Position numbers and translations under genes: made by a program. This document shows positions 704-63,100 of a stretch of DNA of 64,000 nucleotides, piece by piece. The notes under the pieces are model-generated. The model saw only the letters and a list, made by a program, of their open reading frames with translations. It did not search any database and was not told the origin of the DNA. Numbering within the stretch: position 1 is the stretch's first letter; each line of letters begins with the position of its first letter. The DNA comes from Botryllus schlosseri (Eukaryota), in assembly GCA_051294905.1 (NCBI GenBank), contig CM119377.1:10664001-10728000 (forward strand), given 5' to 3'.

Positions 704-6503
<5,800 letters not shown>

Positions 6504-11900: not shown

Positions 11901-14900
11901 ATACAGAAAAGTATATTGTGACATTATGCAACTGTAATTTAGTAGATTAAAAGGGTGAAAACGCAGTCAACTCGAGAACAGCTAACCACCACATTCGAAA
12001 TCAGAATTAACGCAGATCTTGTCATAAAAAGCTTCAAGATCACTCTCATCTTATGATTGTAACTAACGTTAAATATCATTCATGAAAGTAATCAGACATG
12101 TGTAAGTAAACACGTCGCAACACGGTAGACGCAATATGAGCGTTAGGAATGACGATTCAAAATGTGCGTCTTCGTGATCGATGCATATTTAAAAAAATGC
12201 TTGATGCCGTTTACGTAAGGCTCAGCCGAGCATGGGGCTCGGCGAGTCATTGAATAATTAATATAGTCGTATGCTGTAAAGTCGTATTGAATGGTGCTGT
12301 TTCTCTATATGTTATATGCGAAGAGCACGAGATTTGGAAAACTGTATTGCAACTATATGTTTTTCTTCAACAAAATATAGCCTAACGATCATTGGCTACG
12401 TTTACTAAAGTCTAAAATCGTGGTGACGCAGTGTCAGTTGATGCAATTGTGTTTGGAGCAATTTTCTGATTCAGTTGCGCGTCAGAAATGAACGTCACTT
12501 CCAACACTGCAACATCTTAAAAAACCTGCTAGTGTTCGCCCGACATTTTGAACTCTACTGTAAAATCAATTTATATTACATTGTGCGCTGTACCGACGTG
12601 CCCCGCCGCAATACCTTCACATTCATGTGGTACTCGGGGAACTGGGGCGCTCTGTTTTTTCGGCATACGCTTAGGGTAGTGCGGGGCCTACGATAAGTTA
12701 AGTTATCGTAGGCCCCGGGTAGTGTGATATCATCTTTTGTAATGAAACATTTACCGTAGTGGCCCTCTGATAAAACCGTGTCGGAACTGCCTGTTGGGTT
12801 CGATATTCATAAATATGCAATCTTCATTTAAACGGGCCAATCTCCTGTACAGTTTCATCTCGTAACTAACCGCGATGCGAATCTTCTGATATCCACAATA
12901 TACCAGTTACCGGATACGGATTTAGTTAAAATTATACTAGCTTTAGGAAACTGTTGTCTTCTACCTTTTGCCCGATAACAGTAATTCCATATGATTGATT
13001 TGACTTTCAGATAACCCGACTCGATATCGTTAAATCTAACCCGTATTCGTGATTTGAGCTTCGAATCCGTAATTCGTTGCGTGTCGTGCGCAATGCACAT
13101 ATCCAATTCCAGCGAATCGAATCCGTTGAAAATTCGCATGATGGCATGAATATTCAGAGTCATCGCAAGTCTCTTCTCCAAATTTCAATCCGCCTTCGTC
13201 GAAGTCGTAATTCCAAACCTTTCGACCCAACCGAAATATTTAATAAATCGATGCGATTCGGTTCCGTGTCACGTGACGTGTCAAGCAAGACCCTAGGAAT
13301 TTGCAATCAATTAAACCGGAGTAAACGCGTTGCTCCCTGTCAGGTGTTTGAGATTTGGAATTATTTATGCCGGTGTTTCTTAACCGTAGGTCGTAGAGCC
13401 AGTCTCGTGGGTTCGGCGGAAGTCAAGACAGATTTGCTCTGAAGTGTAATATTGTTGATATGTCTCATGATCGTGTTTCACGGTTTTTGGCCATTAAACA
13501 CTGTTGTTGACGCACAGTTCATTTTGTGCACCAGTATGGAGTATTATATAGAAGTGTTTTAGATGTGCAATAGTGTAACATGGTAGATTTTCGTAACGCC
13601 GGAGGCTTGGAGACTAGCGCAACGGTTCGTCTGGTTAGCAAAGGGTAATAACCACCGCTTTATGTGCTTTCAGCTTATCGACGCGTTTGGAAGAGTACTT
13701 TTCGAGGCCTCGGACTACCGCACCGATCTGAACGATGAAAACGCGATCGGCCCGGACCTCGAGCGTCTCATCGAGAGAATGACCGTGGCCTACGACGGCA
13801 TTCTGACGGAAGAGGACGACGAGGGCTACGAGGACTACGAAGAGGAACACCACAGCCTCGATCACGGGCCGTGCACCTGGGAGATCTTAAAGAAGGTCTG
13901 TTTTTACGAGCTTTCTATTATTGATGATATCTGATTTCGCACCGTACTACCCGTTGATGTATGCAGCGCTCATATTGCATAAGCTTTTGTTAGAGTTAGA
14001 TTGATAGACAGAGCGCATTAGTTATGTTGATGTTGATCATTCCGCACAGCTGATGCATACCGTAAACAGTCCTGGGCTTCCTTGTTAGCGCTTTTTGCCG
14101 CTACATTTCCAATCCCTATTAACGCAGGGTGGGATTTCGAAGTCTATTGATTATTTCGAAGATTGTCTTCCTGCCGTTTTGCAGTGAAAAGGCAGGCGTA
14201 TGAGCGTAAATGATCTCTGTCTACCCGCACCTGCATATTGTGTGCGGCATTGAACTTGCAATTATGCGAGACAAGCCGACTTTTATTATACGAGAAACAA
14301 AGAGTGGCGTGTCGTTTCCAAACGCGGTCGATTTTGCATCGATCTTGTTGCGATCCGTTGCTGCACGAATATAATGGGATCTACGGTTTGATACCGATCA
14401 AGGAATACGCACAGGCTAAAACAGAGAACGTATAAAGTGACTTGATACAGCGAGCGACTTGAATCTGTGACGTAACAGAGAAAGATGTAACTCGCGAGAC
14501 TTAGATGTGTGACGACACAGTTGAATTTACGCTAGGCTTCATTTCGTCCGAGACGGTTTAGGCTTGTATGCATCCTGCAATGCAACGCTATCGATTTTAT
14601 ATTCAATATCGTCTTACTTTTTTAGAACTGTAGTTTGTGTGCTTCGTTTATGGTTTTGTAGACCCGCGTGTTTTTACGATTAGGAATGGTGTCAGTCGAT
14701 GAATTGCTAGCTATTCGGGAGAAAATCAGTCGGGAACGTTCCCGGGTGAACTTACGGCGTAGGCTCAAGCTTTTACAACTCACGGCCCCTGAGGAACACT
14801 TTCATCGAGGGTACAGTGTCCGCGTAACCGAAGTTACAGCGGCATGTCGGATGGTAGCCTACGGCGCGGCTTGGATCATGCTGCTTCTGTGTTTGTTTCT

Positions 14901-26900: not shown

Positions 26901-29900
26901 GAAGATTCGGTATAGTTGGGCGTATGTTTGAGCAGAAAATTGTGGAGACAACAAATTGCCTTGACCATGTTATCCACATTTTCGACCTTTAGGGGGACAG
27001 GCTTTAGTAGAATCCGGAAACGTTGGACGAGGATGCCAAACGCATTCTCCACGACACGCCGTGCCCGAGATAGTCGTTTATTATAAACTTATCTCGGTTG
27101 GGCCAGGTATTTTCCAGGGTATGGTCTCATCAGGTGATATGATAGGGGGAAGGCTTCATCGCCAACAAATACATATGGCAACGGAGGCTTTCCTGGCTCA
27201 ACTTCCCGATCTGCAGGTAGCTGCAGTTCATTTGCAGCTAGTGCACGCCCAAATGGTGAATCGCGGAAAATTCCTCCATCCGAGGCGATATGATCCAGCG
27301 ATTGTTCTGAATGAGTCCCCATGCGCGAGAAATCTCAAAGTGACAGCCAATCTTTCCTCTACAGAAACAGCTTTCCTCCAGTTGGTATCGAGTTTGGCGA
27401 TATCTTCTCCAATCAGTTGGATTAGATAATGAAACTGCTGTGGTTTCATCCGAAAGTAGTCGAAATAATGCGCTTCTCTTTCTAATTCATATTCCTTGAC
27501 CAACCTGTGATATTCTCCTAGCTGTTCCCGCCGTTGTAAAATAGGATGCACCCAGATCGATCTGGCCTGCATCTTTTTTTTCAATCTTCTTCGAATGCAC
27601 AAAATTGCCAAGGCTTTCTTCTGATCAGGAGTTAATATCATACTGCAAGATATAAATACACTGCAAGGTATAAATACAGAGTCATTGATGTGATATGAAG
27701 ATACAGAGGTACCCGCAACTCTGCCCAAAGCAAATGTACCACAGCACACAGATTTGTACTAACTACTGGATTTGAAAAATGCGCAACTACCGGTATAGAA
27801 CTACTTAATTATCAAAATGGGTAGTTTGTTCAAATCAGACTAGTTATATTACACCAATCGCTATGCAACAACATCACCAAAAGCCTTCTGTCTTTCTTGT
27901 CTAGTACCACAATCGCCATTCACATGCATCGCTCACTGCCCTCGTACGATATGTCAGCACGACAACCACAGCAACAAAATAGGTACCATCGCCCTCTCGT
28001 CGCATCGTCATTCGGACGGAATCGCGCTCGCGATCATTAAGATAAAGATACAAAGAAATGCTCCGCCGCATCGATCGCTGTTGATCTGGTCGCATTGTGT
28101 GTGATCGACCCTTCACTGCCACGAATTTGGCTTGCCCAACGCACGATAGCTCACCCACACGTGTTCAAAATGTTCGGTGTATACAAAATAATCTATTTTT
28201 GGAGTAGGTTCATTTTACACGCATTTATGCCATCCTTTAGTGACATTGGACACCCAACGCGTAGTCGATGCGACAATATATCCGTCATTTTCATACGCGG
28301 CCGCGTACTTGGTCGCGGTATGTATGGTATTGCGTCATTGAAATTGTCAGCAGAATGTCACAATATTATTCGGTGTCAGTTTGCGTTCGATTTTGGGTTG
28401 AAATCGTGTTTATTTACAGCCGCGCCGAGTCCATTTGTAACGCAAAACACAAATTTAATGACTACTCAAATTTTAGTGATTGCTTTGTGCGCATTGCCAC
28501 GCCTTTTTCCGAAGCGATTATTGCTAGCGTTAACTATTTATGATATTCCAACCGGTAACGAGATAGTAATGCTTATTCTGGTTTAGATTAAAAATCGCAT
28601 ACTCGGGCCTCCGCCGCCTCGGTCCAAGTCGCTACACGAACTGTTGCTGGAACAGATCCAAGAGCCACCGTTGCCGTTACGTCACGTCCGCCCGCCGCCG
28701 GAATCGCCTTTGATGAAGAGAATCGACGACTGTCACGGCTTTATGACGTCGGCGCGGTCTTACGACGATATGCTGAGTGAGTAGAATCGCCAATGTTTTC
28801 CGCTAATTTTTTGCATCGTGTTGTTGGATTTGGCCATTTGGGCTTTAGTTAAAGATTTTGGTATCCTGTATTTTTGTGGGGTTAAATCGGTGCCGGCATT
28901 TTCTCGAGTAATCCGGCAAGGAATTTTGCGACGCTTGACTTTTGAGAGTGCCAGACCGAGTAATTCGGGATTTCGGATAAGCAGTGGTGATAACTGCTTT
29001 ACCCCTGGACATAATGGCGTCTGCCGCAGTCTCGAGCGCTTCGCCAACTGTATTTCACTTTATTCACAATTGCGAAATTTGAGAGCTTGAAGGCTTGTCC
29101 CTCAATTACGAAATAAAACGCCTGATTTTGAACAGATTTAGAAAATTAGAAGTCTTCCTGATATATTTACGACTTGTACGCGGCTGCTTCGCAATGCTGT
29201 GAGTGTTGTGAGAAACCTTTTGAAATAAGCATACAATTCGTTTGGGACCAGTAATATGTGGAAGCATGGCCTACTAGGCCATGGTGGAAGCTAAATCGAC
29301 TTTTTTAAACGACATTTTATCGATATTGACAGTAGAACAGGCAGCGAAGTCGCATGCCATTGAAAAGAAACCAAACAGCAATCGAGTTGGTGGCTTCTAC
29401 GGGACTCTCTGCCTTGCAGAATAATAGGTTTACTATCAAAAAGACTCCAACAAATTTCTCACTGCAATAAACTTTCAATGACGAAATTTTACCGGACCGC
29501 ACGCTAAAAAGGCTAAGAACCAGTTATCCACAGCCCTGATGCTGTAAACCAGTGTTTTTAGGCCCAAATCGGGATGAAATTACTGTTGTGGCCGGTCTTA
29601 CATGGGCAGGCTCACACCTCTGTACCGGAAAGTAATGTCACACATAAAATAGCGTAATGCAGGCGGATATTTCTTATTAGTCCTTCCATTACAGCTGTTT
29701 TAACTGCGTTTCCTATTTAAACATCCGCGCTGCTGTGGTGTCGCAGGCGTAATTGGAAATTAACAGTTTCCGATTGTAAGAAACGCGGCGCTGATTGCAG
29801 ATATAGCAGCTCCGTTTTGTGACGACGCCAATTTGCCGGATTACTGCGCGATCCGCTTCACCTGCGAGCTTATAATTACCGGTTTTATGACGTAAGAAAC

Positions 29901-32900
29901 CGCACGGAAAGGTCTTCCGAGAACGAACGACGGCGAGACCGCCGCTGGTAATTTACGCCGATGAACAATCGGGAATTGTGATGATGTCATTTTTGCGACA
30001 ATTTATATGTTAAATTTGATGCTCCTCGCGCGTGAGATTCTACTCGAATTATATTGCATTTTCCGGGCTGTAAACGGAGATAATCACACGTTTTCCTGGC
30101 TGTACCCGGTGCTCGCGACAGCCGCTTACTTGTAATTGCGATATAATCGCGGCCGTTCTCCCTTATAAGGAATTATAGTGCTGCCGCGTTGCGATGCGTG
30201 CGTTTCACGGAAGTTAGCTAAACTTTCGGTTGTCCTATTTCGGGAAATGGACTGAATGTCATTTTTTTATGAACAGATACGAGAAGGACAAAGCGAAAAC
30301 TTGACGCGCCGCCGTATGCCGCGCAATTCGGGGTCGCCGTGAGCTCCACGGACTTTGACGAGGTAATCATTCCACGCTTATCTCTTTGCAATCGCTTTGC
30401 TTGTGTAAAAGCCCCGAATGTTAGTCGTGGAAAAATCTACAAAGCAGACAGAAGCAGTGAGGAAGTCCTTGATGGCTCCCGAGTCGGTTCAATCGTTGTA
30501 TTTATGCATAGAATGCAGCTGACAATCTCCTGTATCCAAAACTTTACTGTCTGTTAAATCGTTTTGGAATTGTCTGTTACTGCATTGATATATTCGGTGC
30601 TTGTTTGTGTTAGAAGAGAATTGGTTTTGCAGCTTGATAGATGCCATCGCAATTTTTGATTGAATCTGCGCATCGCAATCCGTAGCAAATTAGGACTTGG
30701 TTTGACCTTCGGATAGTTTCAATTATGACCATCGACTAACCTTATCAACATAGTGCAAGTCGACTTACTGTCCCAATGCAAGTATTCAAATTATAACTCG
30801 AGGCTAAAAGCTTCCATCATAATAACATACCCTCGACGAACGTGCCCACGACCTGTGCCGGCTATTTCTCGATACACGCACTAATAACAAATTGGTTGAC
30901 AAGAAAACATGGAATTAACGGCCCTGCCAGCTGGACTTAATCCTCGACCCTGGACCTTACATTCTGCACGGCGAACAGTTTCAAGCACAATCTTGCTTAT
31001 GAACTCGTTGGAATAATTAGCGGCGGAAGATGGTCATGACCCGTATGCAGATGTGGTCAAAGTATTAATGGTTGGTGATCAAGTAAAACTAGAAGCAGCG
31101 ATTCATTGTCAAAGTCAAGTTAATTCTTAAAAGAATGAGATCGGTTGAGAACTGTGCAACATCTGGCTACCCCATGAAATTGTGAGGATGTCCGAACAAA
31201 CGATGGACAACAAACAAATAAGTCCCAATTTCAACCAGTAGAAGCAAAGTTATTGATGTTCAAAATTTAAGATTTAAAATCATAGTAGGCCTATATACGG
31301 TGGTAAATCAATAATTATTGAAGAATTTGCGACCGTAAATAATTTTTTGTGCTTCAATAACCATTATATTTACTTTATAAATAAATCCAGATTTTTTTAC
31401 TGCAATAACTTCGCTTCCGCTAGTTGAAATTGAGCAAAAATTAGTGTGCATCGTGTTTTAATGTAACCTAACAATTTTATCAAGTAGCCTGTAAAATTTG
31501 AAAAAGAATTTAATTTTAAACAGCCGTAGTGTACAGGTCTTCAGCATTATTTTCAGGAAATCTGGAAAATAGATTGGTATTAATTTACTGGCGTTTCGCT
31601 CTAATTAAACGAATGAGGCAACTAGAATTTTCTACCTCTCCAAGTCGCGTTAATGTCGATGTCACATCGTTACAACCAAATAGGCAGACGGCTGCTAATC
31701 TGTAATGTAGGATTCCATGGGTCTGCAATGTAAGGGTTCATAATGGGATTTTTCAACGAAGGACTAGCCAACGTTTGGGATGTGACGCGATTATCGTGAG
31801 ATTAATGGCTTGATACTGTGACATTGCCGTTTTTGTTTCAGTCTGACACGGACTCGGAAGATACCAGCGACAGCGATAGCAGTTTTATGTTGGGCTCCAG
31901 CACGCCCGAATCTCCGTTGAACGACGACGAACCGCAGTCATTCCAACGTCACAATAGAGACTCGAACCCGTGTTCTCTCAGGTCGTCAGGTAAGACGCCC
32001 GTTATAACTACTCATGTTAATGCATGATGCAGTAGTTAATCGCTCCGAATCCTATGAAAATTTACCTAATAAAGGTGATGTTAACTTACCCCAAAAACAC
32101 TATCGACTTAACAGAATCCAAAGTCAAAAAGTATGTAGCGGGGCCTACGATATTTAAATATCATAGGCCCCGTATGTAGTTATGCCAAAAATATCTTCAG
32201 CAGAAATGGAAGTAATCTGAAATCATAACTGCCGGGACTTGGGTATTCCGAAAACTTAGAAGAGCTTCGCCACTGCTCAGTGCTCATCTATGAATTTGTA
32301 TGCGACCTCGAAGTTTATAGACCACCCTCGGCGTATCCCTCGTTATTTATTATTCCCACTCTGTTGTGCTTTCCGAGCGAACCTGTTTTGTCGCGGTTAA
32401 ATTTTACAAGGGTTTTCGGCGCGTGAACATGTCCGGCTGGTAGATTTTATGTAGCGATGCGCCTCTCGCCTGGAGGCGTCGCTTCTTTAATCCTGTGCGT
32501 TTTAATTGCGCGTAGGTTTTACTGGTAATTGGCCGCGCCAAGGTGATGTTTACTTAACGCGAAATCGACCCGAGTATAGGTTAAATTGCCCATACGTTGT
32601 CCGACGAAGATTGATACCCGCAATTAGATTTGTTACGCGGTTTAAATATCTCGGCTTGGTACGCGATTTCACCGTGTAGTTCATGATGCAGTTTGCTGGG
32701 CCAATCGCATTACGTTCATTAGAAATTGGGATTGCGTTTTTACTGTTACCAGTGAATCTGGCATGTTGAAATTGGCTTTAGAAACGTAATAACTATTATT
32801 ATTATGAAACGGATGCATCAATCAATATTATATCAAAGTATTAATAAATTCGAAAATGATTATTTCACTGAATGTTAACGTGAATTGTGAATAGTAATAC

Positions 32901-37790: not shown

Positions 37791-39487
37791 CACTGTGTTG
37801 CGTGGTTGCTATGTCATGTCTTCCGGAAATCTCGCGTATTCTTATTGAACTCTGTAATTTTTTGATTTTCGAGCGTTATCGACTTTTTTTTATGAAGCTG
37901 TGACGCGGTATCGGGAATTCAAATCTCGAGATAGTTTTGCTGGGCACCGCGTAATAAATGCAATACAACACACGATCCTAACTGTACTGATACCAATGGG
38001 TCGTGATGGAACCTATTTATATTAGCAATGCTCGGTGTAATGTGTAGCCTACCTACTTTTGAAGGCGGCAATGTAAGGTACTTTTGAATATTGTTTGTTT
38101 AGCCGCGCAGTATTGTGAAATCTGCCGATGGATATTGGATATCTGTACACAAGTACAGTCTCTGTGATATGCTTGATAAAGGTCCGGTTTCGGTCGCTCG
38201 GTATTTCTGATTTGCATTATGACATCATATCTGTGACGTCAGGACGTGATACTGGTGATTTCTTTACCTCCCCCAAAGAACACAATTTTGTAGCTACCGC
38301 ACCGAAAGCAGCACTAGTGTTCGCAACTGAAGATTGCTTTTGTACATCGATTTTACGGTGCTATTTCATTTTCTTTTCGGTACGCTTGTTTATTATGTAT
38401 TTATACGCTGGTACAGCTGGCCTGGACCATTCCTGTGTTTAACATCTGCGTTATCGCTGGGCCAACTCACCCCCCTTTCAAATGTTGTGTTCGTATGTTG
38501 TCACTTTATTAGTGTCGTTGCGTTACCGCTACAATTTTTTACCCTGGCAATCCCATTTGTCAGGAGAATTAGGCCGGTTTGCTGACTGATTATGTGGCGT
38601 GATGAAAGTACCGTCGTTATTATTCGTGAGAACTGTGTTTATGCTGTGTCGACTATCGTACAAGCGCTGGTGATTTTTAGTCAGGCGATGTGTTTGAATG
38701 TACTTTTGTGGAAATTATTTTCTCTTACTTTTCGAAATGTGCAACTGAATAATAGACTTAACCGTGTCGATGACTCGTGTTGGATCTGACGTGTATCAGT
38801 AGTTCCAAAAGTGGGCGATATCGTCCCCTGTGGACGATTCTGAGAGGCAGAGGGAGAAAAATACGACGAGGTGTATATGGGGCGACACGTTCGAAGGGGG
38901 TCATAGGCGAGGTGCTAATAATAAGAATGCCCACAAACTTATATGCAACCAATTTTGGGTTTCTCGTCAACTAAAATTTATTATATCAATGGATGTTGAT
39001 AGAGTAAGTCGATGCTTGAGTCATCCCGGCCCGTGACAGATGGAAAGGATCAAATCGGGGAAGTTTCATTCAATTGAACTTGGTTGTGAATTGTCTCCGC
39101 AGCAACGCACGTGCATCCAAAAATTAGTGCTCTGCATCTAAAATCTTTTGGAAGTAGTGACACAATACAAACAAAACTACTTGGGTAAGTGAAGCAAGTT
39201 GATAAAACGTGCTTTGGTAGGCCTACTATGGAAAAGTAGATTATGATGACGATGACCTCTAGCTTTTACGGGGCGAAACAGTCCGGAACCACTGATCTAT
39301 ATAGAGGTAGCGTAGTGGTATGTCCCACTCTCCCACAGCTGAGCTAAGACATCATTGGGTTGCGAGGTCGACTCCAGAAAATTCCTACTTCAATGTTTGA
39401 GCTTTATCTAGGCTGCTCCTCGCCATGTGATCCGCGTAAGCGGTGTCTTGCAAAAGCCTATAGGACCAAAGTTGGCCGTGCTGCTAG

Positions 39488-41214: not shown

Positions 41215-41290
41215 ACATTTCGCGGGCCGCACAGAATAGCGTCGCGGGCCATATTTGGCCCGCGGGCCGCACTTTGCCCACGTCTGTTTT
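41215..41290 (-). mobile_element. hAT-Charlie-like MITE terminus; related fragments at about 40310-40590 and 48870-49150
   Basis: Minus strand CAGACGTGGGCAAAGTGCGGCCCGCGGGCCAAATATGGCCCGCG, a typical Charlie-type end with GGCCCGCG repeats. Confidence 0.65.
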
Positions 41291-42679: not shown

Positions 42680-43016
42680 GTAAATTATATTCACCAATAT
42701 TTTCGTGAAAACATATTTGTCACTCCATAACTACTGTGCGCGCAGAGCAACAAAATTTCAGGGCTTTACTTGACCTTTCTGAATATTAAATGTTGGTACT
42801 CCGTGAAAACAGCCTCGAAATATTCAGGCTATCTTTCGTATTGGCGGATTTTCTACTTGATAACTGAATACAGCGAAAAGTACCAAGTAAGTAGATCACA
42901 AAATATTACGAAATATAAGTAGAGAAAATCAGATCTAGTTGAGTAAGTACCAGAAGTAGAGGAAAACTATTTGAGTACTGCAAAAAAGTAGAAGTACTTC
43001 GTTACTGACTACCTCT
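42680..43016 (-). mobile_element. Representative of an abundant TACT/AGTA-rich MITE family with AGAGGTGGTCAGTAACGAAGTA terminus
   Basis: Closely matches 61109-61462; degenerate fragments also at about 18597, 22530, 24185, 24760-24900, 34050, 35600-35900, 47910, 48328, 49660-49802 and 63041. Confidence 0.75.
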
Positions 43017-43464: not shown

Positions 43465-45090
43465 CTGTCAGCAACTTTGAATAAATTCGTAAAAATAATT
43501 TTCTTCGCGGTTGCTGAAAACTACGAGTCTCTCTTATACGGCCATGACACCGCAGTACGTGAATACTAGGGGATTCATTTCGTACTAGACTACTAATCGA
43601 ATCACTCACGTATTCCCTTATCCCCAGCCAATACGAACAACACCTGGCTCGTCACGCATGTAAAAAGCTGTACTATGGCGTAACAGAGATTCATTTATGT
43701 ATTATTTTGCTAACACTACCACGTGCCAAATGATGTGTCAGAAAATGTCGTGCTTCGTGTACCAGCTATAGAAAGAAGCTGACTGCATTTCGTCCCCGGG
43801 AAACTTCATCGGTCGGTACTTTATATATTATTAAAGAACGTATTTATAGAGTTGCAAGCACCAATCTGTCCAGGTGGCCGGTTGCGCTAAAAGGCTGGGT
43901 TGGGATATCTTCTGCTGTAAATGATTCCTACTGTTCAACCGGGTACATATCCTTAATTTGGCGATATTCATGCGTTTCGAGCTCCGAGAGAGGAAGGATG
44001 GATTGCGCTTGTAACATTCTGGTAATGCGGTTTTTGCCGAGTTGGATCGCATTTTTTCACTTTATTTCGCACGCCACACCTGTCACCATCGGGCTTAGCT
44101 GAATGGTGGTCATCAAGGATCTCAATTTGGGTCACGGGCGGGATTCATACCTTTTGACTGTTTGCCCGTCGGCCCAGTCACATGATGCCAAAATATTATC
44201 TCCAAATCCATGTCTCTGTTTTCAGTGGAATGCTTAATTACCAAGCATATATAATAGGTAATATTAGCCTTCGGATCATAGCGGCTGTATTCTAGAAACA
44301 CCGTTATCAGCAAACAATTGAATTTGAAAGAATACAATGAATGACCGATTGAATTCTGTTATAAACCCACTGAACAGTGGCTTTAACCTGCGAGTCATGG
44401 CGATATTTACGTTGGCATAGCCTACTTCCGCGCTCCCTCTGTTCTAGTCGTGGCCATTCCTGCGTATGCGTAGTGAGTGCTACAAAAGACTTATCAGAGA
44501 GCGCGGACTCTTCGCGGGTCGATTGAAATAGGTTTGCGGGCTTGGTATACAATAGTGTAATTATTCTCTTATAATTTCTATCTCAATTATTTTCAAATTC
44601 AATTCAATTACTTATAAAATACTTCAAATAATTACATACCATTTCCAATTACTTTTGATATACTGCTGTATATAACATATTATTGTATCCGGGGTTATTT
44701 TACCTCTATAGTTTCAACCTGTTTTATGCTTTACGTTTTTCTTTAGGAATCTGATATTTAGGTGTGTGCGTGTGATCTGATTGTGGCAGGTAGGGTACGA
44801 TAAGCTGAAAATGGAGTGAGGTGTGCTTTACGCATGATGGGTTGTGTGACATCCATGAAATTGGGTATGTTTCCCTATACCTGCTTAACGTCAGACTTGG
44901 TAATATGATCCTACGGCATTCTATGATATCAAACATTTTGTTCTAGCAGTGGCAACAAAAAGAACGGGAGAATTGCTCAAGTTTATGCTGGACCTACAAG
45001 TCTACGACTGTATTGTACAGTAGGCCTACATATGCAATTAATCATTGCCAAACTCAATCGGTATTATTAGTTTCACAAATTCAGTAGTAG

Positions 45091-55913: not shown

Positions 55914-56232
55914 CATAGAATATAACGGAGCACTTTATTGGCTCAAGTTTACGCTTAAGTTTACGTAAATGAGTTAATGTTCTCTGATACCAATGTAGTG
56001 AATGTTATGAGTAATATGGACGCAAACCAGATATTATTCTCATACGGAGCCGGGCAGAATCAGGATATTTCTACGGAAGCGCGGAAATTTTCAATATTTT
56101 CAAATGGCCAATTTTCAATGCCGAATGCAACCTCGTGGGCTGTGATATATAAAATTGTATCTTTTCGATTCATAGCACATTTCATCACACAACTTGAACT
56201 ATTGATTACTAGGTTAGTAATCTATACTTGAA

Positions 56233-56282
56233 CAAAGTCACTCAACTATGACATAGTTGAGTGTCATAGTTGAGTGACTTTG
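56233..56282. mobile_element. 50-bp micro-insertion: perfect 20-bp TIRs, 10-bp spacer, 8-bp TSD
   Basis: TACTTGAA-CAAAGTCACTCAACTATGAC-ATAGTTGAGT-GTCATAGTTGAGTGACTTTG-TACTTGAA. Confidence 0.85.
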
Positions 56283-57152
56283 TACTTGAACAGCTTCGTT
56301 GTTGAGTTCGATAATCAATTTGATTCCACGGGCGATGGCGCTAGCGGTCAGATTAATTTTGTACCCTTTTGTTACTGCTGTCTCGATAGCAATTCATCTC
56401 TCGCACATCGAGCGGATTGTCGGACAGTTCTCAAACTTACATAAACTTGATCCATATCAGAGCTGGCCCGGTAGATGAAATATCAGGATCAGCAAATCAG
56501 AATGAAAATTAACACATATATAGAGGGCAGGATTCAGCTAACTTTTGTACTGCGATTCGTATGGTTATCACAGTTACCTCTACTACCGAAGACACTGCTC
56601 CTGGGTTAGGGATAAGTATAATATTATGAATATAAAGATATGTAAATTCTCAGCAATCTCGAAATCTAAACAAAACCTGCCTGAAGCCCCAGGTCCAATA
56701 GCTCAGTGGTCTGGTCAGTGTTGTTTCTTGCTGTTCACCGAAGTGGAACAGCATTCTGATATAGGAAGATGAAACATGACAACCGAAGTGACTTTTCTCT
56801 AGTTTACCGGTGTCCGCCCTTGTATTGATATATAATACGTTTTGTTGCTGATAATGGTCATGCGATCACCTGATAATTCTCGTGATTATTTACATCTAGA
56901 TTTAACATATTGCCTCTTTTTACGAAGTACCGGTAATCGTAGGGGTAAGCTTAAACTATACCTTCGAGACGAAGTTCATGATCGTGTGCGGAATACTGAA
57001 TGAGAATCGGTGACGTTTTACATAACCTAGAAAAAACAATGACAAGTTCGAATATTTTAATAATTGATTCAACTCCCGTACTTTCATGTTGTTATCCATA
57101 TTTATAGGAGTGTGAAATTCTTCAAGATCTTGCATTGGCCGGTGCTCAGGTC

Positions 57153-60100: not shown

Positions 60101-63100
60101 GATTATAGAAATATGCTTATATCGTCGTAAGAGCCCCTGTTTTGGTTTGTAACTATATTCAACCAGTCAATATTTGTATTTTTGCAAATTTCATTGTTTG
60201 CGAATAAACGTGTCGCTTGAATAGAACCCCAAATCCCTTATGTTCTGAAGGTTTGAATGCGGCCCCGCGAAACAACTTGAGTTTGACACCCCTGCACTAG
60301 AGTAGCCTAAGTGATGCAAGCAGGCAAAATCTGCCTGAGGACTCCAAAATAACTGTAAGTGGTCTGTTACTGGTCAGCTCTGACCAGTGACCAGGCCTGA
60401 CCATTTCTATCCAGACGACATGATGTGGAGTTGATATCGACCAAAGAAATACCCTTAGGCATGGCCCAAACCTGACATCTGCGCAATGATTGTATCCAGA
60501 CATACTCTGGGTCTGATATCTGCGTATCGTTTGGCGTCAGACATGCTGCGGACTTGATATCTATGCAGGAAACAGCGCCAGGTATGGTCTAGACCTGATA
60601 TCTGCGCACTATTTGTATTAGGACATGCTCCGGAGCTGATATCTGCGCATCAAAAGAATCCAGGTGTGGTCCAGACCTGATATCTGCGCACTATTTGTAT
60701 TCGGACATGCTCCGGAGCTGATATCTGCGCACCAAAAGAATCCAGGTATGGTCCAGACCTGATATCTGCGCACTATTTGTATTCGGACATGCTCCGGAGC
60801 TGATATCTGCGCACCAAAAGAATCCAGGTATGGTCCAGACCTGATATCTGCGCACTGGTTAAGGCCAGATATTCTCCGTAGTTGATATCTGGGCATCTGG
60901 TTAGGGCATTATATGCTCAATGCTCATATATGAGCTGATATCTGCGCACTAGGGTTGTCCAAAATTTGGAAAATCTCAAAAAGTCTCCGTGATTGTGTCT
61001 CATTCTATAGATTATTGATAAAAAACAACAATTAGCCTGAAAGAAGCTTACAGGAAGGCCGTTAAGATTTCGGTCAAAGCGTTTAAAAGTAGCTGCTCAA
61101 GAATGGGCCACCCCTCCACCTAAATTATATTCACAGATACTTTCGTGAAATCATACTCGTCACTCCGTATCCACTGCGCGCGAAGCGCGACGAAAATTCT
61201 GTGCTTTACTAAACTTTTATGAAAATTAAATGTTAACACTCCTAGAAAACAGCTCCGAAATTCCTCAGGCTATCTCCCTGATTGTAAGATTGAACTACTT
61301 CTACTTGACAAACTGAAAATAGCGAAAAGTAAGTAAGTAGATCACAAAATATTAAGAAGTAGAAGTAGCAAAAATCAGATCTACTTGAGTAAGTACCAGA
61401 AGTAGAGGAAAACTACTTGAGTACTTCGAAAAAGTAGAAGTACTTCGTTACTGACCACCTCTGGTATTCACTGATGGTGGATCCGTACTGAAACGGTGAA
61501 TTCGCTCAACACTTGCATAAGCGCCTTTGCTTTGTCTCGATGAAAACACGACATGTAGGCTTCAGCCGTTTCCTTCACAATGAAGCAGTCATGCTGTAAA
61601 AGCTTCTGTGAAGCAGGTGTTGTTTGTTCATCATGTATTTCGTACCTCAACATGTCCTGAATTAATCTTAAATCATCACCTGCCAAACTACTAACAATGC
61701 GCACTCAGAATCCCCGCCGGTAGCAGACTTCTTGAACTCCTGATCAGCAAGCTGCTGCTGCCGTGGTCATTGAAGCATAGCCAATTAGCCAATCAAGAGC
61801 CGTGGTTATTTGATTACTAGTCTTCTCGCCGTTCTGTGGTCAGTGGCACGCCCATTCTTGAGCAGCTACTTTCAAGCGCTTTGACCGAAATCTTAACGGC
61901 TTTCCTGTAAGCTTCTTTCATGCTAATTGTTGTTTTTTATCAATAATCTATAGAATGAGACACAATCACGGATACTTTTTGAGATTTTCCAAATTTTGGA
62001 CAACCCTACCGCGCACCATTTGTATCCGGATATGCTCCGAAGGTGATATCTGCGCACCAAAAGAGCCGAGGTATGGTCCAGACCTGATATCTGCGCACTA
62101 TTTTTATCCGGACATGCTGCCGAGCTGATATCTACGCACAAAATTCCCCCAGGCATGGTCCGCACCTGATATGTGCGCACTATTTGTATCCGGACATGCT
62201 CCGAAGGTTATATCTGCGCACCAAAAGAGCCCAGGTATGGTCCAGACCTGATATCTGCGCACTATTTTTATCTGAACATGCTCCGGAGCTTATATCTGCG
62301 CACAAAATTCCCCTAGGCATGGTCCGGACCTGATATCTGCGCACTGAATCGTCCTAGACGTGGTTAAAACATGATATCTGCACTCTAAACGAACCGTGAC
62401 CTTCATATGACCTCGATGTCTGCGGTTTTTGGTGATATCTGAGTATATCCACAATGATATCTGCGATATCTGAGTATATCCACAGTAGTGATATCTGCGA
62501 TATCTGAGTATATCCACGGGGCCACATTTCATCTTTCTTGACACAAGATATTTTATTCACAGAAAAGCGACTTCAAGAATGGATTTGTGTTATACTCTGT
62601 GGAAACCTGATGTTGTTTAATTTACTTCACCTCATTTTCTATTTTCGAATTGACACTCTTCATATCATGATTTTATCCAGCTGTGAGTATAGTCTGCTTT
62701 TTCATCACATAACAATAGTTGACTATCTCTACTCTAAACCAGCAGTTATTTGATGATGTCAATTGGCTGGATTATTTAGACTAGAAAATCTGCATACCAT
62801 TTTGCCATATCAATATTTGAGCGTAAAAATGAACTTATTGTGACTCTGCAAAGAACTGTTACCGGTATCTATTTTCAAATCTACATTGTGATAAGAATGG
62901 TAGTAGCTTTGTTATGGTGAAGTAAAGAAACAACATTATTAAAGTTAGAAAAATAGCATACATCTCCTTTACGGGCTTTTTACTTATTTTGCCATGCATC
63001 GATCCGATTTTAATAGCCTTCTGAAAAGGCATACGCACAAGCAGAGGTGGGAAGTAACAATTTACTTCTACTTTTTCAGAATTCTCAAATAATTTTATTT

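What the first reader, a model, noticed from the sequence alone, without database searches (positions are those of the whole stretch)
32131..32179. 34-bp palindrome of exactly 17+17 bp with a 7-bp TSD: P-element-type excision footprint or micro-transposon (key member of a family)
Seen: CGGGGCCTACGATATTT|AAATATCATAGGCCCCG between TATGTAG direct repeats. Two relatives (12682, 29265) share the C..GGCCTAC terminus, and each has its own different 7-bp flanking repeat, which is very unlikely by chance. Established: Drosophila P transposase cuts with a 17-nt stagger, so excision sites often keep about 15-17 bp of each TIR between the TSDs; P-superfamily elements make 7-8 bp TSDs. Inference: these are scars of a P-superfamily family (no full-length parent in this window) that leaves tiny hairpins through the genome, or they are themselves among the smallest mobilised units. 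Because G precedes the left repeat at both 12682 and here, an 8-bp TSD with an asymmetric end is an alternative reading; the 29265 copy favours 7 bp.
Basis: partly seen in the sequence, partly recalled or inferred. Interest (0 to 1): 0.85.

Follow-up and report, generated by a model that had tools for sequence, protein, structure and literature searches.

The report
P-transposon excision scars, 7-bp duplications
The 34-bp palindrome is most likely the scar left when a P-type "cut-and-paste" transposon jumped out; hundreds of such scars in this animal genome indicate that these transposases cut about 18 bases inside each element end, close to the 17 known for the fruit-fly P element.

Summary

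**The window.**
- 32139-32172 is a 34-bp palindrome with one CpG-type mismatch, flanked by TATGTAG twice.
- 12682-12717 (36 bp, GGTAGTG x2) and 29265-29283 (19 bp, GTGGAAG x2) are relatives.

**Genome-wide.**
- CGGGGCCTAC-N(0-30)-GTAGGCCCCG occurs at 380 sites; with N(31-60) only 18; reversed controls give 0.
- The CAT/CAG-GGCCTAC sister families add 105 sites.
- In a sample of 52 sites, 43 carry a 7-bp direct repeat (at most 1 mismatch) exactly abutting the palindrome. Shifted controls give 0-1.

**The parents.**
- Elements of 2.4-7 kb share the same ends and 7-bp duplications.
- Two sister-family elements look autonomous. L114 has one 853-aa THAP plus P-transposase ORF and TIRs identical over at least 65 nt. 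L063 is an insertion polymorphism, with an empty allele in two samples.
- A profile of the transposase family hits Drosophila P transposase (6p5a) at E=2e-20, with the DDE residues aligned.

**Why these are scars.**
- Arms never exceed 18-20 nt of TIRs that run well past 60 nt.
- Junctions without extra bases are at most 36 bp and recur at self-complementary microhomologies (CG, ATAT, TA).
- Junctions with extra bases never recur (p=1e-4).

This fits end-joined overhangs from a staggered cut of about 18 nt. It argues against mobile micro-transposons and against an 8-bp duplication.

It is a new member of a known kind. The scan flagged the same thing on another piece of this genome (s1-291514).

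The parts
32132..32138 (.). left copy of the 7-bp target-site duplication TATGTAG
   Evidence: abuts the palindrome exactly, as in 43 of 52 sampled genome sites
32139..32172 (.). 34-bp excision footprint. It holds 17-18 nt of each TIR of the CGGGGCCTACGATATTTA|CGGCC subfamily, joined at a central TA. There is one CpG-type mismatch in the right arm.
   Evidence: both arms match the parent TIR (L035 5' end) for 18 nt with a 2-nt overlap
32173..32179 (.). right copy of the duplication TATGTAG
12675..12724 (.). second footprint: GGTAGTG | 36-bp palindrome (subfamily CGGGGCCTACGATAACTTA|CGGCC, one C>G change) | GGTAGTG
   Evidence: The same 36-mer without the change recurs at 3 independent loci among the 43 sampled.
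29258..29290 (.). third footprint, from the sister family with CATGGCCTACTAAAAACA|CGGCC ends: GTGGAAG | 19 bp (12 nt + 9 nt with a TA overlap) | GTGGAAG
   Evidence: The parent family includes L114, which has an intact 853-aa THAP plus P-transposase ORF and the 7-bp duplication GTCCCAT.

Best explanation
The three window palindromes are donor-site scars left by excision of P-superfamily DNA transposons (THAP plus P-transposase). These elements share the end architecture C-R-K-GGCCTAC-N8-CGGCC and make 7-bp target duplications.

**Inferred mechanism.**
1. The transposase cuts the transferred strand at the element tip. It cuts the other strand about 18 nt inside the TIR, just 5' of CGGCC.
2. Each flank therefore keeps its copy of the duplication plus a 3' overhang of about 18 nt of TIR sequence.
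3. The two overhangs have identical sequence, so they can pair only at self-complementary motifs: terminal TA, ATAT, or CG. Otherwise they are joined with no overlap or with templated extra bases.
4. Fill-in then gives a near-perfect palindrome between two intact duplications.

**Shown here:** family membership, the 7-bp duplication, the cap on arm length, the junction spectrum, and recent activity of one sister-family element.

**Inferred:** the cleavage chemistry and the repair pathway.
For: 1. **Parent elements.** Elements of 2.4-7 kb carry the same 13-nt tips and 7-bp duplications: L031 ATCGCTC, L035 GTGTAAC, L036 GTGTGAC, L038 CCTCAAT, L041 GTCAGTT.
2. **Transposase.** L038 and L063 carry THAP (E about 1e-13). 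L063 also has TNP-like RNase H (2e-12) and the P-element HTH (4e-5). L114 holds one 853-aa ORF with THAP and RNase H hits, TIRs identical over at least 65 nt, and the duplication GTCCCAT. The family profile hits 6p5a at 2.4e-20.
3. **Counts.** 380 sites with a gap of 0-30 against 18 with a gap of 31-60; controls 0. A further 105 sites belong to the CAT/CAG sister families.
4. **Duplications.** 43 of 52 sampled sites have an exact-offset 7-bp direct repeat.
5. **Arm lengths.** They pile at 11, 15 and 18-19 nt and never exceed 20, although the TIRs run well past 60 nt. An unambiguous 18-nt arm occurs in the asymmetric junction L094 and in the zero-overlap 18+18 junction L088. In contigs laid on L063, two different right arms both start exactly 18 nt from the tip (table 5).
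6. **Recurrence.** Of 43 independent loci, 24 junctions have no extra bases (at most 36 bp) and 13 of these recur. None of the 19 junctions carrying extra or mismatched bases recurs. Fisher p=1e-4.
7. **Recent activity.** The L063 element is absent, with a single intact GTAGGAC, in contigs of two samples.
8. **Established knowledge.** Drosophila P transposase makes a 17-nt staggered cut (PMC7776569). Galileo, also of the P superfamily, makes 7-bp duplications with consensus GTANTAC (PMC4168063). This matches the GTnnnAC target logo found here.
Against: - No locus was found where a full element and a footprint are alleles of each other. Reads were laid on L063, which showed only occupied and never-occupied alleles.
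- The cut position is read from repair products, not measured. 17, 18 and 19 nt cannot be fully separated, because in a palindromic junction the base after one arm is by construction the complement of the other arm's last base.
- No copy of the CGGGG subfamily with an intact ORF was found. Its long copies (L033, L035, L036, L038) are internally deleted or decayed. The intact elements belong to the sister CAGGG and CATGG families.
- About 15% of sampled footprints are secondary copies carried inside another repeat, so 380 overstates the number of independent excisions.
Confidence: 0.88

Rival explanations
1. The micro-palindromes are themselves tiny non-autonomous transposons (a pair of solo TIR tips) that the P-like transposase mobilises in trans. 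Each would create its own 7-bp duplication on insertion.
For: Identical 20-, 26-, 31- and 36-bp sequences occur at independent loci with different duplications. The duplications are intact and exactly 7 bp.
Against: - Only junctions predicted by microhomology and lacking extra bases recur. None of the 19 idiosyncratic junctions recurs (p=1e-4).
- Each TIR subfamily yields its own 'canonical' product ending at the same homologous point.
- Lengths form a repair-like spectrum rather than one master copy plus point mutants.
- The arms lack the subterminal GGCC-containing repeats present in full ends.
Confidence: 0.04
2. The scars are products of aborted homology-directed gap repair (synthesis-dependent strand annealing copying the element from the sister or homologue and stopping early). 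They would then be extreme internal deletions and would say nothing about a long staggered cut.
For: - One site (G000:C13:22967071) keeps 37 nt of one TIR.
- Some extra bases copy TIR positions beyond 18, for example L095 with TTTACG twice. This implies some templated synthesis.
- Many internally deleted long copies exist.
Against: - Random stopping predicts a broad distribution of arm lengths. Observed arms stop at 18-20 nt, and site counts fall 21-fold between the gap 0-30 and gap 31-60 classes.
- The same boundary, just before CGGCC, is seen in the CGGGG, CAGGG and CATGG families.
Confidence: 0.06
3. Palindromes unrelated to transposition (replication slippage, hairpin-forming regulatory elements or chance), with coincidental flanking repeats.
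For: None beyond the palindromic shape itself. The heptamer GGCCTAC is also enriched in this genome for other reasons.
Against: Both arms are identical to the first 17-19 nt of TIRs of elements that encode a transposase. There are 380 sites against 0 for the control. The 7-bp repeats sit at the exact offset.
Confidence: 0.01

Closest known systems
Drosophila melanogaster P element and its excision footprints (17-nt staggered donor cleavage; PMC7776569)
   Same: - THAP plus RNase H-like transposase homologous by profile (E=2.4e-20 to 6p5a, DDE aligned).
- Short perfect tips within longer imperfect TIRs.
- Scars that keep up to about 17-18 nt of each TIR between intact duplications.
- A palindromic target motif.
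   Different: - 7-bp duplication, not 8-bp.
- The TIR sequence is unrelated (C-R-K-GGCCTAC... against CATGATG...).
- The inferred stagger is 18 nt (17-19) rather than 17.
- The transposase is too diverged for a single-sequence phmmer hit to 6p5a.
- The host is a non-insect marine animal.
- The evidence here is natural genomic scars, not biochemistry.
Galileo / 1360 clade of the P superfamily (7-bp duplication, consensus GTANTAC, palindromic 15-bp target motif AANGT...ACNTT; PMC4168063)
   Same: 7-bp duplication. The target logo is G-T-n-n-n-A-C with A/T-rich positions 2-3 nt outside it. The transposase carries a THAP domain.
   Different: - Most copies lack kilobase-long foldback TIRs.
- The tip sequence is different.
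- No relationship to Galileo was tested beyond the length of the duplication and the target motif.
Vertebrate THAP9 and zebrafish Pdre P-like elements (PMC10983969)
   Same: P-transposase homologues outside insects. Zebrafish THAP9 excises Pdre2 and P elements. The domain set is the same (THAP, RNase H).
   Different: The passages of that paper I searched cite the 17-nt stagger only for the Drosophila enzyme. They report no cut position or natural footprints for the fish elements. Here the cut position is inferred from hundreds of natural scars, and the elements are multi-copy and polymorphic.

Membership tests
P superfamily of DNA transposons | Transposase with an N-terminal THAP zinc-finger DNA-binding domain | tested here: met
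   Pfam THAP: E=7.6e-14 (L063:1897-2400), 4.4e-13 (L038:1629-1916), 1.6e-13 (L114 ORF). The profile also hits the THAP1 and THAP2 structures.
P superfamily of DNA transposons | RNase H-like catalytic domain homologous to P transposase, with the D-D-E triad | tested here: met
   Pfam TNP-like_RNaseH_N at 1.9e-12 and 3.5e-12. Profile A1 against 6p5a gives E=2.4e-20. DEM, the second D (V-S-D-N-H) and the E of D-P-x-E-R-R-F align and are invariant in 19 homologues.
P superfamily of DNA transposons | GTP-binding insertion domain inside the catalytic domain | tested here: inconclusive
   Pfam TNP-like_GBD at E=9e-4, 20.1 bits, below the 24.8-bit cut-off. Some homologues carry PF21788. GTP dependence cannot be tested here.
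P superfamily of DNA transposons | TIR-bounded element flanked by 7-8 bp target-site duplications | tested here: met
   7-bp duplications flank nine long elements and 43 of 52 footprints. An 8-bp reading is rejected: G at position -1 in 11 of 44 sites.
P superfamily of DNA transposons | Unusually long staggered donor cleavage (17 nt in Drosophila) | tested here: met
   Indirect evidence only. Retained arms are capped at 18-20 nt, junctions without extra bases are at most 36 bp, and two laid footprints have right arms of exactly 18 nt. There is no biochemical mapping.
Transposon excision footprint (donor-site scar) | Both copies of the duplication retained, with only terminal TIR nucleotides of a family that has full-length members between them | tested here: met
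Transposon excision footprint (donor-site scar) | Occupied and footprint alleles at the same locus in different haplotypes or individuals | not tested
It showed occupied against never-occupied (exact empty site) alleles, not a footprint allele.
MITE / mobilised micro-transposon | Copies of one master sequence, including its idiosyncratic features, at many loci, each with its own duplication | tested here: not met
   None of the 19 junctions with extra or mismatched bases recurs at an independent locus. Of the 24 junctions without extra bases, 13 recur, and they match products expected from microhomology or zero-overlap joining.

The most novel reading that the evidence does not exclude
The exceptionally long staggered donor cut has been measured only for the Drosophila P transposase. 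It may be an ancestral, conserved property of THAP9-like/P transposases. Here it would be readable at single-nucleotide resolution from natural scars in at least three TIR families of a non-insect marine animal: an 18-nt cut placed immediately 5' of a conserved CGGCC. At least one family (the intact 853-aa ORF element L114, the polymorphic L063) would still be active, giving a second experimental system for P-type transposition.
Probability: 0.55. Interest if true: 0.5.

Novelty: new member of a known kind. Interest (0 to 1): 0.45.

Why it matters
- **Mechanism.** The scars are a natural record of how a distant branch of P/THAP9 transposases cuts DNA. The full-text searches made here turned up no cut-site measurement or genome-wide footprint census for P-like elements outside Drosophila.
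- **Annotation.** It explains a class of several hundred perfect hairpin-forming palindromes in this genome that would otherwise be mistaken for regulatory hairpins or MITEs.
- **Follow-up material.** It points to apparently intact, polymorphic elements that could be tested for activity.
- **Repair.** The junction spectrum also records the host's end-joining preferences: self-complementary microhomology and templated extra bases.

Tried and rejected
1. **The ORF in L031 is not the family's transposase.** The roughly 600-aa ORF inside the longest first-fetched element (L031) looked like the transposase. It belongs instead to a nested 2.8-kb element with CACTG...CAGTG ends and a 3-bp TAA/TTA duplication. 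Its other copies lack the CGGGGCCTAC ends.
2. **Some direct searches gave nothing.** Pfam found nothing for the decayed L033 ORFs. Single-sequence phmmer of the L063 transposase against the PDB also found nothing. An alignment profile was needed.
3. **8-bp duplication reading:** rejected.
4. **A single 32-36 bp length peak:** not seen. The spectrum is discrete and bounded at 36 bp.
5. **The third family's transposase could not be reached.** Its long copies do not coincide with the 150 best PF21787 matches.
6. **The window's own footprint sites were not tested for polymorphism.** The read laying cap is 1.
7. **GTAGGCCTAC as a Tc1/mariner-type TA-GGCC-TA scar:** rejected. The 8-mer with other flanking bases is only 1.4 times its control.

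Full report
**1. Observation.**

The window is G000:C7:10664001-10728000 of a 495-Mb genome. Only 5 ORFs of 150 aa or more occur in 64 kb, which indicates a eukaryote.
- TATGTAG (32132-32138) | 34-bp palindrome (32139-32172) | TATGTAG (32173-32179). The two 17-nt halves differ at one position, CGTAGG against CATAGG, a CpG-type transition.
- GGTAGTG | 36-bp palindrome (12682-12717) | GGTAGTG.
- GTGGAAG | 19-bp palindrome (29265-29283) | GTGGAAG.

GGCCTAC is over-represented in the window, 18 occurrences against 2.9 expected.

**2. Genome-wide family.**

- The 13-mer CGGGGCCTACGAT has 764+740 hits against 0 for the reversed control.
- Hits fall into two classes: plus/minus pairs 13-40 nt apart (micro-palindromes) and pairs 1.3-7 kb apart (long elements).
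- CGGGGCCTAC-N(0-30)-GTAGGCCCCG gives 380 sites. N(31-60) gives only 18. Controls give 0.
- The sister tips CATGGCCTAC and CAGGGCCTAC give 105 more sites.

I fetched 50 consecutive sites from the first two contigs and added the two window copies.
- 28 sites have a perfect 7-bp flanking direct repeat and 15 have one mismatch.
- When either flank is shifted by 1-11 nt, at most one site matches.

So the duplication is exactly 7 bp and abuts the palindrome.

**3. What the parents are.**

*Ends and duplications.* Long elements share the tips and have 7-bp duplications: L031 ATCGCTC, L035 GTGTAAC, L036 GTGTGAC, L038 CCTCAAT, L041 GTCAGTT. Their TIRs continue well past 60 nt. Subfamilies differ at positions 14-18:
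- ...GATATTTA|CGGCC
- ...GATAACTTA|CGGCC
- ...GATACTTA|CGGCC
- ...GATATTCA|CGGCC

*A false lead.* The 600-aa ORF in L031 belongs to a nested CACTG-ended element with a 3-bp duplication. Its other copies lack these TIRs.

*The real coding content.*
- It showed up in L033 and L038 and in a search of the genome with an L033 fragment.
- L038 (tips CGGGGCCTACGATACTTA, duplication CCTCAAT) keeps a THAP ORF and a fragment with a weak, sub-threshold match to the P-transposase GTP-binding domain.
- L063 (tips CAGGGCCTACTATATTCA|CGGCC, duplication GTAGGAC) has a THAP ORF and a 695-aa open frame. Pfam hits are TNP-like RNase H (1.9e-12), P-element HTH (4.4e-5) and a sub-threshold GTP-binding domain.
- L114 (tips CATGGCCTACTAAAAACA|CGGCC, TIRs identical over at least 65 nt, duplication GTCCCAT) carries one uninterrupted 853-aa THAP plus RNase H ORF. 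It is 50% identical to the L063 protein.

*Link to the Drosophila enzyme.*
- 298 database homologues of about 850 aa have the same domain set.
- A 19-sequence profile hits the Drosophila P transposase structure 6p5a at E=2.4e-20. The DEM motif, the second Asp and the Glu are aligned and invariant.
- The genome holds at least 150 matches to the P-type RNase H domain over the Pfam cut-off, including several families with 790-813-aa open frames.

*Recent activity.*
- Contigs of two samples (X1, X9) join L063:1354 directly to 4869 with 7 shared letters. That is the exact empty site with a single GTAGGAC.
- The same call shows that other copies lack 2 nt at L063:2398, the point where the THAP frame and the 695-aa frame overlap.

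**4. Why the micro-palindromes are excision scars.**

*Arm lengths.*
- For each sampled site I measured how far each arm matches any parent TIR.
- Arm lengths pile at 11, 15 and 18-19 nt.
- None exceeds 20 nt, although arms of up to 40 nt would have passed the search.

*Symmetric products.* They are explained by two identical 3' overhangs pairing at self-complementary motifs:
- CG gives 20 bp.
- ATAT gives 26 bp.
- A terminal TA gives 34 bp, or 36 bp in the subfamily with one extra base.
- The ...TTCA subfamily, whose end is not self-complementary, gives an 18+18 = 36 bp zero-overlap product (L088) and 17+17 (L093).

*Other junctions.*
- Asymmetric junctions show a full arm paired with an internal microhomology, for example the recurrent 31-mer.
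- Sites longer than 36 bp contain extra bases, often templated copies of nearby arm sequence.

*Recurrence test.*
- Of 43 loci with independent flanks, 24 junctions have no extra bases and reach at most 36 bp. Thirteen of these recur at another locus.
- None of the 19 junctions with extra or mismatched bases recurs.
- Fisher p = 1e-4.

This is the pattern expected from repeated repair of the same kind of break. It is not what copying of a mobile micro-element would give.

*Same boundary in the sister families.*
- Two footprints of the CAGGG family, laid on L063, have right arms starting exactly 18 nt from the tip (tables 5 and 5c).
- CATGG-family products fit 18+17 or 18+18.

*One exception.* A single site keeps 37 nt of one end. 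It probably reflects aborted templated repair.

**5. Cut position.**

- 17 nt cannot produce the recurrent 36-mers of the ...AACTTA and ...ATTCA subfamilies without added bases.
- 18 nt for all subfamilies fits every canonical product. So does a cut just before CGGCC, which means 18 or 19 nt depending on subfamily.
- In a palindromic junction the base after one arm is by construction the complement of the other arm's last base. For that reason 18 and 19 nt cannot be separated in one subfamily.
- I therefore state about 18 nt (range 17-19).
- The Drosophila value is 17 nt (PMC7776569, and cited again in PMC10983969).

**6. Target site.**

Forty-four independent sites give G(27) T(25) n n n A(18) C(22). 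Positions 3 nt outside the duplication on each side are A/T in 42 of 44 sites. This resembles the Galileo target GTANTAC within AANGT...ACNTT (PMC4168063). G at position -1 occurs in 11 of 44 sites, so the 8-bp alternative fails.

**7. Comparison and novelty.**

- The family passes the tests for P-superfamily membership. The exception is the GTP-binding domain, which is sub-threshold.
- P-type footprints are classical in Drosophila, and P-like elements are known in many animals.
- New here: a genome-scale set of natural scars in a non-insect, the inference that the long stagger is conserved in a transposase so diverged that single-sequence search misses the fly enzyme, and candidate active elements.
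- My literature searches found no equivalent report. The library lacks most subscription journals and Repbase.
- Another first-stage note on a different piece of this genome (s1-291514) records the same kind of object.

**8. Caveats.**

- No occupied/footprint allele pair was shown.
- About 15% of sampled footprints are secondary copies carried inside another repeat. These have flanks TTAATATCAGCC...AGTCG (L068, L073, L078, L082, L100, L102, L107, L110).
- Only the first 100 rows of each genome search are visible, so the histograms rest on samples from two contigs.

Noticed in passing
window 56225-56290: A footprint of a third family, unrelated in sequence: TACTTGAA | CAAAGTCACTCAACTATGA (19 nt) + a 12-nt templated copy of the right arm + the 19-nt inverted arm | TACTTGAA, an 8-bp duplication. 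Its 17-mer has 110+116 genome hits (control 0/1). These include pairs 2.3-4.3 kb apart and, within the first 100 rows, eight micro-palindromes of identical length. Arm length is again 18-19 nt. The transposase was not identified; none of the 150 best PF21787 matches falls in its long copies.
   Followed up: partly
window 39217-39226 and 45020-45029; genome-wide: The 10-bp palindrome GTAGGCCTAC, which is the TIR heptamer GGCCTAC in both orientations, occurs 10,508 times against 119 for the reversed control. The core 8-mer with other flanking bases is only 1.4 times its control. Of 65 sampled sites, about 70% lie in at least 11 different repeat families and the rest in unique contexts. No flanking duplication is visible. 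Unexplained. It could be a transposase or THAP binding half-site pair or a component of several repeats.
   Followed up: partly
L031:1939-4325 (G000:C1); also L056:3829-6645, L057, L058, L060-L062: A 2.8-kb element with CACTGGTCAACAAA... ends and a 3-bp TAA/TTA duplication (CACTA/CMC-like). It encodes a protein of about 600 aa with a weak Pfam RAG1 importin-binding (RAG1 N-terminal) hit (E=0.003). Atlas feature hits to RAG1_RNase_H and Transposase_21 clusters score 0.77-0.79. It has 137 protein matches in the genome. It may be a relative of Chapaev / N-RAG-TP.
   Followed up: partly
L063 (G000:C15:12615500-12622500), element 1362-4868: Insertion polymorphism. Contigs of samples X1 and X9 carry the exact empty site (joint 1354->4869). 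Other copies lack 2 nt at 2398, where the THAP frame and the 695-aa frame overlap. Run X13 covers only the element interior, not the flanks, so it may be RNA.
   Followed up: partly
L032, L034, L037, L039, L042, L043 (G000:C1): Many copies of the ...GATACTTA subfamily are flanked on both sides by the inverted sequence CGTGAAGTGTACAAATTTCG instead of a duplication. They alternate with a 2.4-4 kb unit that has those ends. This looks like a larger composite or array-like repeat.
   Followed up: no
L068, L073, L078, L082, L100, L102, L107, L110 (G000:C1, C2): One footprint site (flanks TTAATATCAGCC ... ATCAGCCAGTCG) was itself amplified as part of another repeat. The copies now carry different versions of the palindrome (20 bp and three 27-bp variants), which suggests the palindrome is unstable after duplication.
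   Followed up: no
whole genome: At least 150 matches to the P-transposase RNase H domain over the Pfam cut-off. Several distinct groups have 792-, 799- and 813-aa open frames, an unusually rich and apparently young P-superfamily complement.
   Followed up: no
window 41222-41281; 42914-43009; 61360-61459: A short stretch similar to an internal part of L038 (78% over 60 nt) lies at 41222-41281, beside a GC-rich palindrome at 41243-41282. Two copies (92-93% identical) of the sequence flanking L033 lie at 42914-43009 and 61360-61459, so that is another dispersed repeat.
   Followed up: no
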